Shown here one piece after another: positions 57,027 to 64,000 of a stretch of 64,000 nt of DNA. Under the pieces are notes generated by a model. That model ran no database searches. It was not told the origin of the DNA and saw only the letters and a program-made list of their open reading frames with translations. The position numbers were made by a program, and so were the translations under genes. Origin of the DNA: Guillardia theta CCMP2712 (lineage: Eukaryota > Protista > Cryptophyta); NCBI RefSeq assembly GCF_000315625.1, contig NW_005434657.1, positions 575,407 to 639,406 on the forward strand. The letters are read 5' to 3'. Numbering within the stretch: position 1 is the first letter of the stretch; each line of letters opens with the position of its first letter.

Positions 57027-58580
57027 ATGGCTGCTCACTGTCGCTCCTCCTCCTCCTCCTCCTCCTCCTCCTCCTCTCCATCTGTCTCTCCCTCGCCCTC
57101 CTTCTCTCCTCCTCCTCTTCTCCCTTCGTGTTCTCCCTGTCCGACTGCGAGCCCTCCTGCCCGATCCTCCCGGTCCCCCTCCGTCAAGTCCCAACCTCTC
57201 CGGTCGCGGTCGGCGCGTCAGAGTGGCGCATTGCGTTCGTTCATCGCTTCTGTCCATCCGCGGTCTTCGCTCCTCCTCGCCTCCTCCATGCCAACGTCTC
57301 CTCCCGATGCTTCCTCTGACTCTTCTCCCTCTCCCTCTCCCTCTTCCTCTCCCTCTTCCTCGCGGCGGCACTCCAGCCAACATTCGCAGCCTCATCGAGG
57401 AGAAGTGGAAGGCGAGGATGAGGTGGGGGAACTAAGAAGGAAAGTCGAAGGGCTGAAGAGATCGAACGTGAGGCTGCAAGCTAAGCTGCAGATGTCTCAG
57501 TGTCTGGTATGACTTCAACTCTCCTCATGGCCTCTCACATCCCGTGCGCCAAGTCACCTCAAGCCTTTGCTGAGCGAGAGGAGACGATAAAGCGGCTGAG
57601 GCTGCAGGTAGAAACGCTCGACAAGGAGAACAAACGGCTCAAGACACAGGCGAAGATCTCGCAAGACAGACTGAAGCGAATGATGGAGGAGAAGAGCAAC
57701 CAGTCGGTCTACTTGTCACGATCATGCTAAACTCACCAGCTGCCAGGCACCCGCGCGAGGCTGCTAGAGGAAGAGGAAGCGACGTACAAGCGGGAGGGGG
57801 GAAGGAGGTGAGGGAAGTCTTCCTCCAAGTCCGCCTTGACGTGTCGCAAGGCGAGTCGTGGAGCTAAAGGCGTAGGGAGCTCGATGGCGGAGAAGCGGGT
57901 GAATGCGATGGAGCAGACAACAAGAGGCCTGGAGCGAGTTTTGACTGCTCTAGAGGTTCTGATCTCGTTCTACCTGAGGAGAGAGATGAACGTTTGACGT
58001 CAGAGCTGCTGGAGGAGCCAAGTGAACGATCTGCACGTGAAGCTGACAGAAAGAGACAAGGTTCGATTTCATCACGCTGAGATGTCATTCGAAAATGATG
58101 CTGATGATTTTTTAATATGCAATCGAGATTATGATCTAAGATTAACATGTGTGATTGCAATCATGACATGTGTGATATCTATGTGAAGATAACATGTGTG
58201 ATTGTTATGATGACATGGCAGAGCTGTCGCTGGGTAATGTCATGATGACATTCATGATGTTGTCAATCGATAATTTCATTGTACATGCTGTGACTGTCGA
58301 CATGATTGTGACTATCCCGCATTGCAACAAGAGAAGACTGAGGTTGTACACGTAGGAGGTTAAGGGCCTGAAGGAGATGCTCTCTTCCTCTCTCAAGGTC
58401 TTGTCTCCCTCCTCCTCCTCCTCCTCCTCCTCCTCCTCCTCCTCCTCCTCCTCCTCCTCCTCCTCCTCCTCCTCCTCCTCCTCCTCCTCGCTCTCACCGT
58501 CTCACAGAGAGAGTCGATCCTCCTCTTCGTGCGGACTCAAGAGCTGTCGGCAAGCACAAGAGAGAAGAGATGATATGAAA
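57027..58580 (+). CDS. Hypothetical Ser-rich/coiled-coil protein, multi-exon; 3' end approximate
   Basis: Ser/Pro-rich N-terminus, then EVGELRRKVEGLKRSNVRLQAKL and AEREETIKRLRLQVETLDKENKRLK. Confidence 0.55.
58409..58489. repeat. (CCT)n microsatellite, intronic
   Basis: About 26 copies. Confidence 0.95.
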
Positions 58581-58659: not shown

Positions 58660-61600
58660 ATCCGACTCTGTCCGTCAGTGATGTCTGCAAGGAGTTGCGA
58701 TAGTCAGCGAAAGTTCTCGTGGAGACGACTTTCTCCTTCCAGGGATGGACACCTGCTGATCGTCAGGAGCGGCAGCAGCAGGAGAAGGAGCAGGAGGAAA
58801 GAGTAGGGAGTTGAAGGGCGACGGGAGGAGGAGGGAGAAGAGGTGGAGTACCTTGATCTGTGAGGACTAGCGAGTCGTGACGAGAATTTGAAGAACTCGC
58901 AAGCATACGAATGTTTCCTGAGTCTCTTCTGACAACAGTAGGGGCAGCCGCAGGAGCTGCAGCAGGGAATTCTTTCTGCTCCTCCTCACCCTCGATCTTC
59001 AGATACCCGATGGAAGCTTTGATCCTGGCGGAGAAAGGAGATCTCCGCTCTAACAACCTCTCCTGCATTCCTATCAGTCCTCCTACACCACCACCATTTC
59101 CTCCTCCTCAACCACTGCCTCCTCCTCCTCAACCACTGCCTCCTCGTCCTCGTCTTCGTCCTCGTCCTCCTCGTCCCACTCATCTCTCTCCTCTCGCATC
59201 CTCTTCCTCCGCTTTCTCAGCATCACCACCTCTGCTTCACCTCTGTTCGCTTCATCGACGGTTTGCGCAGGACAGGCTGAAGTGCTGCGAGGTCCGAGGG
59301 ATGGGCAGGGGAGGTAGACAGGACGGGAACAGAAGCAGGGGGAGCAGAAGAGGCTGGGATCGAAGAGGAGGAGGAGGGCAGGCGGAAGGTGGAGGCAGCG
59401 ACTGCGGATAAGGGAGGAATGAAGGATGCGGAGGAGGGAGGCAGGGCGTAGGCCGGCATCGACTGTCTCCTGGTCTGCAACGAGGCTCCTATCGACTTGT
59501 TCGATCCTCCTGCTTCCTTGTTGCTCTGAGACTCAGACTCGCCGGCAGAGGATGAAGGAGGAGGATCAAGTTTGGCAGTGGTAGGAGGAGGAGGAGGAGG
59601 AGGATCAAGTTTGGCAGTGGTAGGAGGAGGAGGATGATGAAGCCTGCTCTCCCTCAGCTCGACCATAGCCCCGCTGATCTCCTTCAGACTCTCCGCAACC
59701 TGGAGGCAAGTCAGCTCGATGTCAGCTGGACCTTTCTCACCTTATGCATCATCCTCTCCATCCCCTTCATCCACTCTTGATCCAATTTCAATCCTCCTCC
59801 TCCTGCTCCTCCTCCTCCTCCTCCTCCTGCTCCTCCTCCTGCTCCTGCTCCTCCGCCTGCATTCTTCAGGCTCGAGCGCGAAGCAGCGGACTCGAGGTTG
59901 TCCATGGAAATGATGAGGAGCTTGAGGATGAGAAGGATGACGCGAATCCTGTATGAGGCGATGAGACACGAACAGAACCTGCGAAGAGGAGGAGGAGGAG
60001 GAGGAGGAGGGAGGAGGAACAAGAAAGAAGCAGAGGAGATCGGACTGAAGGGGTGTGAAGTTCTTACTGCTTGCTGTCTGCTTCTGTCATTGCGTTTGAC
60101 ATCTCACGCATGGCATACCTCTTGAGCTCGATAAACATCCTGAAGATTCATAACTTCTTCTTCTCCTCCTCCTCCTCCTCCCTAACCACCACCTCCTCCT
60201 CCTCTCACATGGATTGGAACTGATTTGAGTCAAATTCTCCATTCTCGTGGCACAAAAGTCCGTCACACGTGAGCCTGTCAATGGATCAACAAGAAACAAA
60301 TCTCCTTCTCCTCCTCCCCCCTCCTTCCCTCCCCTTCCTCCTCCCTGCTCTTCTCTCCTTCAGGTCTTCTTCCTCCATCTCCCTCCCTCTCCTCCCTGCT
60401 TCCCCGCTCTAGCATCTCACGTTTGGAAATCGTTCTCAGTGAGATGGATGGGAGAGGACAGCGGCAGCTTCCTCCTTTTCTCTCGATCAGTCCCGTCAGT
60501 CTCTTCCTCTCCTCGTCTCACAGCCCGTTCTTCAACTCGCTGAAATCCAGACCCCCGCCCTTGTCCGCGTCCAGTCGCTGCGAGACAAGCAAAGATGAGG
60601 AAGACACGGGGAGAGGGAGAGAGGAAGAGAAGCGAGACATAGAGGAGACGAGGTGATGATGAAGAGTCGAAGAGAGAGGGAGCGATGGATGGAGGGATGG
60701 AGAGCAGAAAGACGATATGACCGAGTAGACATCTGAAACTTTTGCGTTGAAGTCATTCATGTCGTTGAAGGAAGCCATCGAAGATAAGAGAGGATCGAGG
60801 ACTCCTGCACCACATTCATTCTTCTCCTCCTCCAGGTGCTGCTGCTGCTGTCCCTTCTCTTCCTCCCTTTCATTTCTCTTCCTCCTCATACTTCTCCTCC
60901 TCATCTCTGGCAAACTTCACATCCCCTTTTGCACTCTCTCACCGTTGATCCTCGCTGCCTTGGCTTGACGCTCCTGCTCTTCTTGGATCCTCTTCCTGTT
61001 CTCCTCTTTCTCTCTTGTCACCTGCATCCCGTCACCTCCTCCTCCTCCTCCTCACCAAGTCTCACGGTGGAGATGAACTCGTCGAGTAGGACCTGAGACC
61101 CTGAGAGTCAGATGTGCGAGAGAAGGGGAGAGAGGAAGGGAGGGAGGGGAGGGGAGGGGGAGGGGAGGGGAGGGGAGGGGAGGGGAGGGGACGAGTGGGA
61201 GGGAGGGTGGAGGGAGGGAGAGGAGGGAGGGAGGGAGGGGAGGGGAGGGGNNNNNNNNNNNNNNNNNNNNNNNNNNNNNNNNNNNNNNNNNNNNNNNNNN
61301 NNNNNNNNNNNNNNNNNNNNNNNNNNNNNNNNNNNNNNNNNNNNNNNNNNGAGGGACATGGGAGGGAGGGAGGGAGGGAGGGAGGGACATGGGAGGGAGG
61401 GAGATAATCAGGAGCAGCTGTTTGTGTACAGCAATCACGATGTTGACTAGCACGACCTGCCGGTGAATCAGAGAGGATCCGAGAAGGAGGAGGGAGTGAG
61501 GAGGGAGGAAGAGAGAGGGAGGAGGAAATTTACCCCAGCGATGAGCACGTAGGAGATGAAGAAGAAGGCGACCTGAAGCGAACAATAATTCAACATGCTG

Positions 61601-63575
61601 CTTGCCCTGCTTCCTTCTTTCACCCCTTCCTCTCCTCCTTCTCCTCACCAATCTGTCAATCTTCCCGTCGATGAAGAGCGTTCGAGTCACTGACGATGCC
61701 CAGCTGTCGCCGGTCACGATCTTCAAGCTTGTCAAAGTCACCCTGTCATTGGAGCTTTGGAGCACCTGGAACATGGTGAAGAGGGAGGCGCTGAAGGTGC
61801 CGAAGAACTGCGGCTGTATGTCGCCGAAGAGGTGGGTGGCGAGGACGGCGTAGACGCAGGTGATGAGCAGCTGGATCATGAAGGCGTTGGCCAGTGGGAT
61901 GAGAGCAGCCCCGAGGGCCCCCATGATGCGGTTGAGGTCGTGAAGCCCCTTGAAGATGCGGATGACGCGGAACATGCGGAGGGTGCGGAAGAGGGAGACG
62001 TAGCGGAGGGTCTTGGAGTAGATGACGTAGGAAAGGATGGAGAGGCAGACGATGAAGACCTCGAAGACGTTCCACATGTTGGAGTAGAAGGGCCTGAAGA
62101 AGTCGGAAGAGCGCGAGAACAGATTGACGGCCAGCTCCTGCCGGTGTCAAGTCAGGAGGGAGGAGGAAGAGGGCGAGGGCGAGGAAGTGGTGGTGAAGGA
62201 GAGGAGGAAGAAGAGGAGGAGGAAAATAAGGACAGGGAGAGTGAGGAAGCGAAGGCAGACTGCAATGGCCTTACAAAGGCGAAGAAAAGCTGATCATATA
62301 GGTCAGCACGAGCAGCAGAGGAGGGGAGAGGTACCGTGATGACGAAGTTGAGGGTGGAGAGGATCTGAAATCTGTTGTCCGACTCGTCTGGCTGGAGTTC
62401 AGCCTGCACGCAGTCGATGGAGAAACTGGCGATGATGGAGAAAGCGATGATGGCTTGTACCATCATCGACTCGTAGAGCTGCAGCGTCTTGAACCTGAAC
62501 CAGATGAACTTGTTCCCCCCGTACTCGCTCAGCTCGTGCGCCCTCTTCCTCTTCAGCTGCTCCTCTCGCACCGCGTGCTGCAGCGTCAGGCACCACGACG
62601 TCACCTCCTCCTCCGTCGAGGCGCTGAACACGTAGGACCGCCCGCTGTTTCTCCCCTCGGGCAGAGTTTGAATCACGAAAGAAACCTCGTCCTCCGCTCC
62701 GCTGTCGTCGTCCACCTCCTTGACAAATGCGATCTCATGCAGGGGGATCCAGTCAGCGACGCTGTCTGACGCTCCCAGTCAGCGACGCTGTCTGACGCTC
62801 CCTGCAGGAGTGCGAGGTGCTCGAGGCAGAGCACGAGATGCTGCTCGTGCCAGCTGACCAGCGCTGCCACCTCCTTCTTGAGGAGGCGACCATGCTTGAT
62901 CCACTGCTGGGATGGGGGCAGGACGAACTTCTGCTCGGCATCCTCTGCTGTCACGGTGATGGTCCCCAGGTCCTTGGAGCCCAGATCCTCTACCTCCCCC
63001 ATCAACTTGCACTGCGTCACTCTCTTCTCCACTATCCATTGAATCTCCGTCTCATAGCGCCCAAGGAAGTCGTGCTTTGACAGCTCCTGCACGTTGTCCT
63101 TGTCGATGTCGTAAATTTCGAACAAGATCTGCTGACTCAGCGAGGGGACGTAGTCGACTTCTATCTTCTTCTTGAACCTGCCGACTGCCGTCACTCTCCC
63201 TCCTTCCTTAGCGGTCACATGAGCACCTGGGGTTGAGGTTGTTCTTTATCCTCTCCGTCCTCCCAATCTGCGACAGCGTCGCTCAGTGAGAGTGACTTGC
63301 GGGGATCACGATCACCTCCTTCCAGATCCCTTTCTTGTTCTTCGTGTATACCTTTGTTGTATCACCACCTGCTGCACAAGGAGAGAGAGAGGTTGGAGCT
63401 CACCACACAGGATGGATCCGATTTGGAGAGGAAATCTTTGTTGACCAGGTTGCTGGAGTCTTTGTCATCCTCATCACTCATCAGCCTCCTTCGACTCACT
63501 CGCACTGGATGGTGAGAAGGAGAGCAACCGACCTCCCCGATGACCCTTCCCCATGTTGCTCTCCTCCTCCTCCAT
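58660..63575 (-). CDS. Single-domain (6TM) voltage-gated cation channel with N-terminal C2 and PH domains and C-terminal EF-hand; ends approximate, spans an N gap
   Basis: Copine-like C2 (NKDFLSKSDP..IGRTERIKNNLNP|RFKKKIEVDY..FEIYDID..HDFLG). PH (KHGRLLKK..DWIPLHEI..FSASTEEEVTSWCLTLQ). S3 WNVFEVFIV, S4 RTLRMFRVIRIFK, pore FGTFSASLFTMFQ|IVTGDSWAS, S6 VVLVNIVIAV|LLDEF, EF-hand DADKGGGLDFSEL. Confidence 0.85.
61251..61350. other. Assembly gap (100 N)
   Basis: Run of n inside a polypurine intron. Confidence 1.
62749..62802. repeat. Perfect 26-bp tandem duplication inside the channel gene
   Basis: CCAGTCAGCGACGCTGTCTGACGCTC at 62749-62774 and again at 62775-62800. Confidence 0.95.
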
Positions 63576-63836
63576 TCGTGGCCTCGAGCTCAGACTCGCG
63601 CCTTTCTGCAGCAACGGGAGGCATTTGCCTGCAAACATTCTAGTGACTGTCTTCCTGCACCCTCTGCTTGGCCTCGCGGTGAGAAGGGAGGGAACGTAAA
63701 GGGTGAGGAAATTCAAACGAGACATCTATGATACAAAACTGGACCAGAGACATTGAGTGGGAATGGGGGGAGACAGGTGAGCCATGGCGAAGGATAAAAC
63801 TGATCCTTGGGAAAGAAAGTGGGCAAACGGAAATGA

Positions 63837-64000
63837 ACGGTAGGTAGGTAGGTAGGTAGGGGAAGGAGGGAGGGAGGGAGGGAGGGAAGGGAAGGGAGGG
63901 AGGGAGGGAGGGAGGGAGGGAGGGAGGGAAGGGAGGGAGGGAGGGAGGGAGGGAGGGAGGGAGGGAGGGAGGGAAGGGAGGGAGGGAGGGAAGGGAGGGA
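63837..64000. repeat. (GGTA)n then (GGGA)n polypurine tract
   Basis: Direct tetramer runs to the window end. Confidence 0.95.

What the first reader, a model, noticed from the sequence alone, without database searches (positions are those of the whole stretch)
58660..63575. C2-PH-single-domain voltage-gated channel-EF-hand fusion
Seen: one 6TM unit with an Arg-every-third S4 and filter TGDSWAS, preceded by an Asp-containing copine-like C2 and a PH domain and followed by an EF-hand loop. Established: single-domain Nav/Cav-like channels occur in bacteria (BacNav, TLESW) and some marine algae (EukCat); C2 and PH bind Ca2+/lipid and phosphoinositides. Inference: a homotetrameric channel integrating voltage, Ca2+ and membrane-lipid signals, or tethering a second membrane.
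Basis: partly seen in the sequence, partly recalled or inferred. Interest (0 to 1): 0.75.

Follow-up and report, generated by a model that had tools for sequence, protein, structure and literature searches.

The report
C2-PH voltage-gated channel gene, frame broken
This stretch of the alga Guillardia theta holds a real 18-exon gene for a one-repeat voltage-gated cation channel with a copine-type C2 domain and a PH domain in front and an EF-hand behind; that layout is undescribed in the papers I searched, but as assembled a 26-base tandem duplication breaks this copy's reading frame.

Summary
On the minus strand lies an 18-exon gene (63575 to 59223, not 58660). It encodes a copine-type C2 domain, a PH domain, one 6TM voltage-gated channel unit (S4 with four Arg and one Lys at every third place, filter TGDSWAS) and an EF-hand.

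- **N gap:** it sits in intron 9, inside S6. The S6 pieces on both sides add up to the same length as in relatives, so no channel repeat is hidden there.
- **One gene:** the end of C2 and the first half of PH share one open stretch, and the second half of PH shares one with S1-S2. A paralogue 125 kb away on the same contig has all of this in one 270-aa open frame. The scan noted that paralogue earlier (s1-444024).
- **Defect:** a perfect 26-bp tandem duplication (62801-62750) shifts the frame inside PH, giving a stop after 236 aa. No canonical intron removes exactly 26 bases.
- **Family:** PH + channel + EF-hand is common among cryptophyte and environmental relatives (PH in 13 of 60). C2 was found in none (0 of 60). 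It derives from copine C2A, with four introns at matching positions.

Expression and function are untested.

The parts
63496..63575 (-). Exon 1: start codon and first C2 strand (MEEEES...GRLLSFSPSS)
   Evidence: The N-terminus aligns with the paralogue (MESSEES...YLLSIECS) and with the copine first strand (KLLLSIECK). The exact donor is uncertain: GTCGAA with a 43-nt intron, which is the homologous phase-2 site, or GTGAGT with a 40-nt intron.
63404..63452 (-). Exon 2: C2 loop 1 (NLVNKDFLSKSDPSCV)
   Evidence: 12 of 16 residues match copine C2A. The intron after CV is in phase 0, as in the copine gene and the paralogue.
63316..63351 (-). Exon 3: C2 strand (VYTKNKKGIWKE)
   Evidence: Canonical AG/GT boundaries and a phase-0 intron at the same place as in the copine gene.
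63227..63267 (-). Exon 4: C2 (IGRTERIKNNLNP)
   Evidence: 9 of 14 residues match copine. The phase-2 intron is shared with the copine gene and the paralogue.
62335..63177 (-). Exon 5: rest of C2 (63177 to about 62946), PH (62921 to about 62590), linker, S1 and the first part of S2
   Evidence: Two long stop-free stretches tile the paralogue's single 270-aa open frame (alignment A2). C2 part: E 1.9e-5 and 2e-11 to copine. PH: 22.8 bits here and 36 bits in the paralogue.
62750..62801 (-). Perfect 26-bp tandem duplication (copies 62801-62776 and 62775-62750) that shifts the frame inside PH
   Evidence: As assembled there is a stop after 236 aa; with one copy the frame is open for 884 aa. The paralogue and relatives show only one copy's worth of residues.
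61766..62137 (-). Exon 6: end of S2, S3, S4 (62005-61949), S5 and the start of the pore helix
   Evidence: Pfam Ion_trans 59.2 bits. 3748 relatives at E<=0.001. 77% identical to the paralogue.
61721..61765 (-). 45-nt in-frame GT-AG intron inside the pore helix
   Evidence: Most relatives lack these 15 residues; two Hanusia transcript-derived proteins, P0005 and P0028, carry unrelated extra residues at this point (alignment A1). The paralogue has an intron at the same point, after MFQ.
61649..61720 (-). Exon 7: selectivity filter TGDSWAS (61714-61694) and the pore-S6 loop
   Evidence: TGDSWAS is the commonest filter among the closest relatives.
61534..61572 (-). Exon 8: first part of S6 (VAFFFISYVLIAG)
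   Evidence: Matches relatives' S6.
61430..61456 (-). Exon 9: middle of S6 (VVLVNIVIA)
   Evidence: Canonical splice sites.
61093..61429 (-). Intron 9, GGGA-rich, containing the N gap 61251-61350
   Evidence: S6 assembled from exons 8-10 has the same 30 residues as relatives, so no coding sequence is missing.
61066..61092 (-). Exon 10: end of S6 (VLLDEFIST)
   Evidence: Conserved VLLDEFIS motif in relatives.
60943..61021 (-). Exon 11: charged helix after the gate
   Evidence: Aligns with relatives.
60722..60804 (-). Exon 12: entering helix of the EF-hand
   Evidence: Aligns with relatives (GVLDPL...KV..Y).
60522..60577 (-). Exon 13: EF-hand loop DADKGGGLDFSE (60571-60536) and exiting helix
   Evidence: Pfam EF-hand_1 13.2 bits alone. 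The aligned EF-hands of P0003, P0004 and P0005 score 26-47 bits.
60421..60474 (-). Exon 14 (RKLPLSSPIHLTENDF)
60209..60274 (-). Exon 15: degenerate second EF-hand-like segment
   Evidence: Aligns with relatives.
60068..60139 (-). Exon 16
   Evidence: Aligns with relatives (ELKRYA...NAM).
59741..59948 (-). Exon 17: helix and Gly-rich stretch
   Evidence: Weak match to P0028; canonical splice sites.
59223..59699 (-). Exon 18: Pro/Ser-rich tail with an in-frame 39-bp tandem duplication (59556-59634); stop codon at 59225-59223
   Evidence: The 3' end is the least certain part of the model.

Best explanation
The locus is a nuclear, intron-rich gene of the cryptophyte Guillardia theta. It encodes one subunit of about 884 aa of a single-repeat, BacNav/EukCat-type voltage-gated cation channel.

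Shown here:
- One Ion_trans unit with a charged S4 and the filter TGDSWAS.
- An N-terminal C2 derived from copine C2A, followed by a PH domain.
- An EF-hand about 60 residues after S6.
- The same layout in a paralogue 125 kb away.

Inferred:
- Four subunits form the pore.
- The Asp at the filter's high-field-strength site makes the pore permeable to Ca2+ as well as Na+.
- The N-terminus is cytosolic, so C2 (Ca2+-dependent) and PH dock it on the inner leaflet. The EF-hand senses the Ca2+ that enters. Gating or placement of the channel would then depend on voltage, local Ca2+ and membrane lipid together.

In the assembly this copy carries a perfect 26-bp tandem duplication in the PH domain that ends the frame after 236 aa. 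Whether that is a real recent lesion, one allele, or an assembly error is unresolved.
For: Modules and coordinates.

One gene: C2's end and the PH N-half lie in one stop-free stretch, and the PH C-half and S1-S2 in another. The paralogue has C2 end, PH, S1 and S2 in one 270-aa open frame, with Pfam PH at 36 bits, followed by an Ion_trans exon at 61 bits.

Model quality: 18 exons, all with GT-AG boundaries. With one copy of the 26-mer the frame is open for 884 aa.

Gap: it is intronic and S6 is complete.

C2 origin: 34% identity to the genome's own copine C2A (E 1.9e-5 and 2e-11), with four intron positions and phases as I read them by eye matching.

Family: the closest relatives are Hanusia phi and G. 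theta proteins with PH + Ion_trans + EF-hand. In the tree this gene and its paralogue are sisters (97/89) inside a clade of 19 sequences supported 99/97.

Ca2+ permeability: changing TGESWSE to TGDSWSE in EhEUKCATB1 made that channel pass Ca2+ and Ba2+, and its EF-hand pair is linked to Ca2+ dependence (bioRxiv 10.1101/2020.04.29.068528).

Tetramer: NaVEh is a homotetramer with an EF-hand-like domain (PMC9114117). It is the best single-repeat solved match, at 58-60 bits.
Against:
- No protein model or transcript-derived protein of this gene or its paralogue turned up in the protein collections.
- The frame is broken as assembled. The only rescue that keeps the conserved DWIPLHEI strand is a 35-nt intron with a weak GTCAGA donor.
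- Pfam does not recognise C2 exon by exon.
- The EF loop has Gly at positions 5 and 7.
- The PH domain lacks an obvious basic phosphoinositide motif (read by eye).
- The paralogue's filter, S6 and EF-loop exons (from just after the start of the pore helix) are missing in an assembly gap. No single intact copy is therefore seen.
Confidence: 0.7

Rival explanations
1. This copy is a freshly inactivated pseudogene. The 26-bp duplication is real and is not removed from the mRNA, so only a 236-aa product is made: C2, half of PH, and 35 out-of-frame residues.
For: - The duplication is in the assembly and no GT-AG or GC-AG intron of exactly 26 nt exists.
- Other perfect tandem duplications occur naturally nearby, including an in-frame 39-bp one in exon 18.
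- No protein of this gene was found in the collections searched.
Against: - Everything else in the gene is intact: 18 exons, canonical splice sites and no other stop.
- The two copies are 100% identical, so any decay is very recent.
- A second intact allele or an assembly error cannot be excluded without reads.
Confidence: 0.4
2. The duplication is an assembly or consensus artefact, or is one allele only, and the cell makes the full 884-aa channel.
For: Removing one copy restores residue-for-residue colinearity with the paralogue and with relatives. There is no other sign of decay.
Against: - The duplication lies inside a contig, not at a gap.
- DNA runs of 2011 hold 58-88% of the region's words, but they were not inspected at this site.
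- No transcript-derived protein was found.
Confidence: 0.35
3. The C2 and PH exons belong to a separate upstream gene, and the channel starts at its own promoter.
For: No cDNA was seen. Several relatives lack C2.
Against: The PH C-terminal half and S1-S2 are one open stretch here. C2 end, PH and S1-S2 are one 270-aa open frame in the paralogue. PH directly before S1 is the rule in relatives derived from transcripts.
Confidence: 0.04
4. More channel repeats are hidden in the N gap, making this a two- or four-repeat channel.
For: The true size of the gap is unknown.
Against: The gap lies between two pieces of one S6 helix, and their joined length equals that of relatives. No further Ion_trans match lies downstream to 58000 or in the readable sequence upstream.
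Confidence: 0.02

Closest known systems
EukCatB / NaVEh (EhEUKCATB1) of Emiliania huxleyi (PMC6509283; bioRxiv 10.1101/2020.04.29.068528; PMC9114117; PDB 7X5V)
   Same: [quoted passage not shown] It is the best single-repeat solved match (58-60 bits). Papers state that cryptophytes have EukCatB channels.
   Different: The filter has Asp, not Glu; this is the natural form of the E305D mutant, which passes Ca2+. C2 + PH replace the short N-terminal helix that plugs the NaVEh gate. The C-terminal tail is much longer. In my tree the TGESWSE clade with NaVEh-like N-termini is well separated from this gene's TGDSWAS clade.
Guillardia theta GUITHDRAFT_112959, _112542 and _122197, and Hanusia phi transcripts (P0003, P0004, P0005, P0028, P0185)
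   Same: PH directly before S1, the TGDSWAS filter, an EF-hand after S6 and similar length. Identity over exon 6-7 is 42-57%.
   Different: None has a C2 domain. UniProt names them only 'PH domain-containing' or 'EF-hand domain-containing' protein.
Paralogue on the same contig (C17, about 449-451 kb; earlier scan note s1-444024)
   Same: The same C2 exons, PH and channel; 77% identical in exon 6 and 47% in C2-PH. It has no 26-bp duplication.
   Different: Its filter, S6 and EF-loop exons (from just after the start of the pore helix) are absent from the assembled sequence; an N gap lies there.
Copine (gene on C50, about 564-567 kb, of the same genome)
   Same: C2A is 34% identical. The KSDP, GRTE, NNLNP and YDID...DFLG blocks are shared, and the four C2A introns I read are at the same positions and phases.
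   Different: Copine continues into C2B and the Copine/vWA domain. Here C2A continues into PH and a channel.
Bacterial BacNav (NaChBac, NavAb) and sperm CatSper
   Same: One-repeat subunits that form tetramers. The filter is T-x-(E/D)-x-W; CatSper also uses Asp (from general knowledge).
   Different: Weaker matches (NavAb about 50 bits; CatSper not among the 60 best). BacNav and CatSper carry no C2, PH or EF-hand. BacNav genes are bacterial and have no introns.

Membership tests
Voltage-gated cation channel superfamily (Pfam Ion_trans, PF00520) | Match to the S1-S6 profile above the gathering score | tested here: met
   59.2 bits against a cut-off of 25 on exon 6-7 alone.
Voltage-gated cation channel superfamily (Pfam Ion_trans, PF00520) | S4 with basic residues at every third position | tested here: met
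   The segment FRTLRMFRVIRIFK at 62005-61949 holds four Arg and one Lys at every third place.
Single-repeat eukaryotic channels (EukCat in the broad sense) | Only one pore repeat per polypeptide, encoded by a eukaryotic nuclear gene | tested here: met
   One Ion_trans region only. S6 is continuous across the gap. There are 17 spliceosomal introns.
EukCatB clade (Helliwell et al.) | Placement inside clade B in a tree with EukCatA, EukCatC, BacNav and CatSper | tested here: inconclusive
   Reference sequences could not be fetched, and the papers' supplements are not held. In my own tree the gene sits in a TGDSWAS clade supported 99/97, apart from the TGESWSE clade that resembles NaVEh.
C2 domain (PF00168), copine C2A type | Match to the Pfam C2 profile | tested here: inconclusive
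No Pfam hit exon by exon.
C2 domain (PF00168), copine C2A type | Homology to a verified copine C2A, including gene structure | tested here: met
   E 1.9e-5 in the whole-genome search and 2e-11 pairwise. The copine gene is verified by its Copine domain at 251.7 bits. Four introns are at matching positions and phases as I read them.
C2 domain (PF00168), copine C2A type | Acidic residues of the Ca2+-binding loops | tested here: met
   Asp is present in NKDFLSKSDP and in YDIDKD...HDFLG. That these bind Ca2+ is inference.
PH domain (PF00169) | Match to the Pfam profile above the gathering score | tested here: inconclusive
   The C-terminal half scores 22.8 bits against a cut-off of 25.1, because the domain is split by the duplication. 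The paralogue's intact domain scores 36 bits.
EF-hand (PF00036) | Twelve-residue loop with ligands at positions 1, 3, 5, 9 and 12, flanked by helices | tested here: inconclusive
   The loop exon alone scores 13.2 bits. Positions 1, 3, 9 and 12 are D, D, D and E, but positions 5 and 7 are Gly. Aligned EF-hands of relatives pass the cut-off.
Copine | C2A-C2B followed by the Copine/vWA domain | tested here: not met
   Only C2A is present. PH and the channel follow it.
CatSper | Sperm-specific heterotetramer with auxiliary subunits; membership of the CatSper clade | not tested
   No CatSper chain is among the 60 best solved matches. No tree with CatSper was built.

The most novel reading that the evidence does not exclude
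Marine protists have a large, undescribed class of one-repeat voltage-gated Ca2+-permeable channels with a lipid-binding PH domain fused directly in front of the voltage sensor. In G. theta two members also carry a Ca2+-dependent C2 domain captured from copine. In this reading the fused modules gate or position the channel, so that a single polypeptide acts as a coincidence detector for voltage, inner-leaflet lipid and the Ca2+ it admits.
Probability: 0.3. Interest if true: 0.75.

Novelty: new variant of a known kind. Interest (0 to 1): 0.55.

Why it matters
Single-repeat voltage-gated channels of algae (EukCats) are a recent discovery. They are used to study how fast Na+/Ca2+ signalling arose outside animals.

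The characterised members have a bare N-terminal helix, which is the inactivation plug in NaVEh. A widespread branch with a PH domain in that place, and two genes with an added copine C2, would bring lipid and Ca2+ control of a voltage-gated pore into the same polypeptide. In animal channels comparable control needs separate partners such as PIP2 or calmodulin.

The shared intron positions also give a clean example of exon shuffling from copine into a channel gene.

The case is weakened because this copy is frame-broken in the assembly, the paralogue is incomplete, and nothing is known about expression.

Tried and rejected
- **Reads:** I have no read evidence on splicing, expression or the duplication. 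By my model they lie in intron 14.
- **Pfam on C2:** scanning the C2 exons one by one gave no hit.
- **Solved structures with the C2 part of exon 5:** only chance matches.
- **ESM Atlas with the paralogue's C2-PH-S1S2 exon:** no usable hit.
- **Word search for proteins of 148-472 aa with that exon:** none.
- **Metagenome scan:** the alignment A2 was not usable. The scan with the single paralogue exon found no relative.
- **AlphaFold2 on the paralogue exon with a 3-row alignment:** mean pLDDT 45.6, so it is uninformative and was not searched further.
- **Supplementary tables of the two EukCat papers:** not held. I could not check which G. theta proteins were called EukCatB.
- **A 28-nt intron after MGKGHRG:** considered first, then rejected. 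Comparison with the paralogue and copine shows that exon 1 runs on through the first C2 strand.
- **Splicing the duplication out:** no GT-AG or GC-AG intron of 26 nt exists. The 35-nt and 53-nt alternatives have poor donors or delete a conserved strand.
- **The joined 18-exon model:** it was built only inside a local script, to check frame and length. It was not sent to any search, family scan or fold tool; all searches were made exon by exon, by reference.


Full report
**Organism and strand.** The window is G000:C17:575407-639406. A GenBank protein of Guillardia theta CCMP2712 (EKX40954.1, P0067) matches another contig of the same assembly at 97-99% over its two longest matched stretches (88% over a third, short one). 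This agrees with the earlier scan note that the genome is G. theta. The feature lies on the minus strand.

**Gene model.** From these I derived 18 exons, all with GT-AG boundaries. Most introns are 41-77 nt long. The joined model was made only inside a local script, to check frame and length.

**Channel.** Exon 6-7 scores Pfam Ion_trans 59.2 bits, E 4e-16. S4 holds four Arg and one Lys at every third place, and the filter reads TGDSWAS. A 45-nt in-frame GT-AG intron (61765-61721) sits in the pore helix. Most relatives lack those 15 residues; two Hanusia transcript-derived proteins, P0005 and P0028, carry unrelated extra residues at the same point. The paralogue has an intron at that point.

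S6 is split over exons 8, 9 and 10. Together they give the same 30 residues as relatives. The N gap (61251-61350) lies in the GGGA-rich intron between exons 9 and 10, so it hides no coding sequence and no further repeat. No other Ion_trans match lies downstream to 58000 or in the readable sequence upstream. Directly beyond the window end, 2259 bases read N.

**PH and EF-hand.** The PH C-terminal half scores 22.8 bits, against a cut-off of 25.1. The paralogue's unbroken PH scores 36 bits. The EF loop exon alone gives EF-hand_1 13.2 bits. It aligns with EF-hands that pass the cut-off in P0003, P0004 and P0005. A degenerate second EF-like segment follows, as in relatives.

**C2.** Pfam sees nothing exon by exon. 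A six-frame search of the genome with the C2-PH part of exon 5 found three places:
- this locus;
- a paralogue at C17, about 450 kb (47% identity, E 3e-33);
- a gene on C50 (34% identity, E 1.9e-5).

The C50 gene is a true copine, with a Copine domain at 251.7 bits and C2B at 56 bits. The pairwise BLASTP E-value is 2e-11. Exons 1-4 carry the matching first strand and the KSDP, GRTE and NNLNP blocks. As I read them by eye, the four C2A introns have the same positions and phases (2, 0, 0, 2) in the copine gene, in this gene and in the paralogue. The phase-2 first intron rests on the less canonical of two possible donors for exon 1. The C2 is therefore copine C2A captured by exon shuffling. The break point lies inside the exon that in copine runs on into C2B.

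**One polypeptide.** The end of C2 and the PH N-half share one stop-free stretch, and the PH C-half and S1-S2 share another. In the paralogue all of this is a single 270-aa open frame, followed by an Ion_trans exon. Alignment A2 shows this gene's two halves tiling that frame with an 8-residue overlap.

**The duplication.** That overlap is the 26-bp perfect tandem duplication (62801-62776 and 62775-62750).
- As assembled, the frame ends after 236 aa. With one copy it is open for 884 aa and colinear with the paralogue.
- No GT-AG or GC-AG intron of 26 nt exists. A 35-nt GTCAGA...ACAG intron would restore the frame but has a weak donor and no pyrimidine tract.
- Perfect tandem duplications do occur naturally here, including an in-frame 39-bp one in exon 18.
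Those places were sent to no search tool afterwards; by my model they lie in intron 14.

**The paralogue is also incomplete.** Its filter, S6 and EF-loop exons (everything from just after the start of the pore helix to the EF loop) are missing at an N gap. No single intact copy is seen in the assembly.

**Relatives.** The exhaustive search with exon 6-7 gave 3748 relatives at E<=0.001.
- The best single-repeat ones are Hanusia phi transcripts, G. theta paralogues and environmental proteins.
- Of 60 long single-repeat relatives, all have Ion_trans, 23 have EF-hands, 13 have a Pfam PH domain and none has C2.
- A local family-specific PH profile finds the N-terminal domain in many more.
- The G. 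theta genome has at least 40 matches to the channel exon.
- No protein of this gene or its paralogue was found in the collections, so both seem to lack a usable public model.

**Tree.** In a maximum-likelihood tree of the exon-6 region, this gene and its paralogue are sisters (97/89). They sit inside a clade of 19 sequences supported 99/97, in which every filter I read is TGDSWAS or SGDSWAS. They are apart from a TGESWSE clade, which includes a sequence whose truncated source name begins 'Chrys' and which I took for the haptophyte Chrysochromulina, and whose N-termini resemble the NaVEh plug.

**Comparison with the literature.**
- EukCatB channels are reported in haptophytes, cryptophytes and pelagophytes (PMC6509283).
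- EhEUKCATB1 has the filter TGESWSE and an EF-hand pair, and its E305D mutant (TGDSWSE) passes Ca2+ and Ba2+ (bioRxiv 10.1101/2020.04.29.068528).
- NaVEh is a 542-aa homotetramer with an N-terminal plug helix and an EF-hand-like domain (PMC9114117). It is the best single-repeat solved match to exon 6-7.
- None of the papers I searched mentions PH or C2 on such channels.

**Mechanism.** Shown: the domains and their order. Inferred: a tetramer, Ca2+ permeability from the Asp filter, a cytosolic N-terminus that places C2 and PH at the inner leaflet, and Ca2+ feedback through C2 and the EF-hand. All of the inferred steps are untested.

**Verdict.** The PH-channel-EF-hand core is a common but undescribed family layout. 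The C2 addition was found only in these two G. theta genes among the sequences searched. This copy is frame-broken as assembled, and expression is unknown.

Noticed in passing
G000:C17, about 448.8-452.2 kb (L002, L004): A paralogue with the same C2-PH-channel layout and no 26-bp duplication. Its filter, S6 and EF-loop exons fall in an N gap (L004 4950-5049). The scan noted it earlier as s1-444024.
   Followed up: yes
G000:C50, about 564.5-566.8 kb (L003, L006): A true copine gene (C2A-C2B-Copine) whose four C2A intron positions, as I read them, match those of the channel's C2. It is the likely donor lineage of the captured domain.
   Followed up: yes
window 61721-61765: A 45-nt in-frame intron inside the pore helix. 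If retained it would insert 15 residues just before the selectivity filter. Two Hanusia transcript-derived proteins (P0005, P0028) carry insertions at the same point, which may be retained introns.
   Followed up: partly
window 59556-59634: A perfect in-frame 39-bp tandem duplication in the Pro-rich tail exon, doubling PPPPTTAKLDPPP. It shows that slippage duplications occur in this gene.
   Followed up: partly
window 58410-58490, 61120-61410 and 63830-64000: Long CCT and GGGA microsatellites flank the gene and fill its introns. The assembly gap sits inside one of them.
   Followed up: no
L005 508-2766 (just beyond window base 64000): 2259 bases read as N immediately upstream of the gene, so the promoter region and the upstream neighbour cannot be seen.
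   Followed up: no
G000, many contigs: At least 40 matches to the channel exon across the genome. Several lie in open frames of 600-1000 aa without apparent introns, which points to a large expansion of single-repeat channels in G. theta.
   Followed up: partly
P0019 cluster: One member of this channel cluster, whose N-terminus matched my local family PH profile (Pfam itself found no PH in P0019), is labelled in GenBank as a Promethearchaeia archaeon MAG (MGB1597082.1). Because its relatives here are eukaryotic algal channels, I suspect a eukaryotic contig binned into an archaeal MAG.
   Followed up: no
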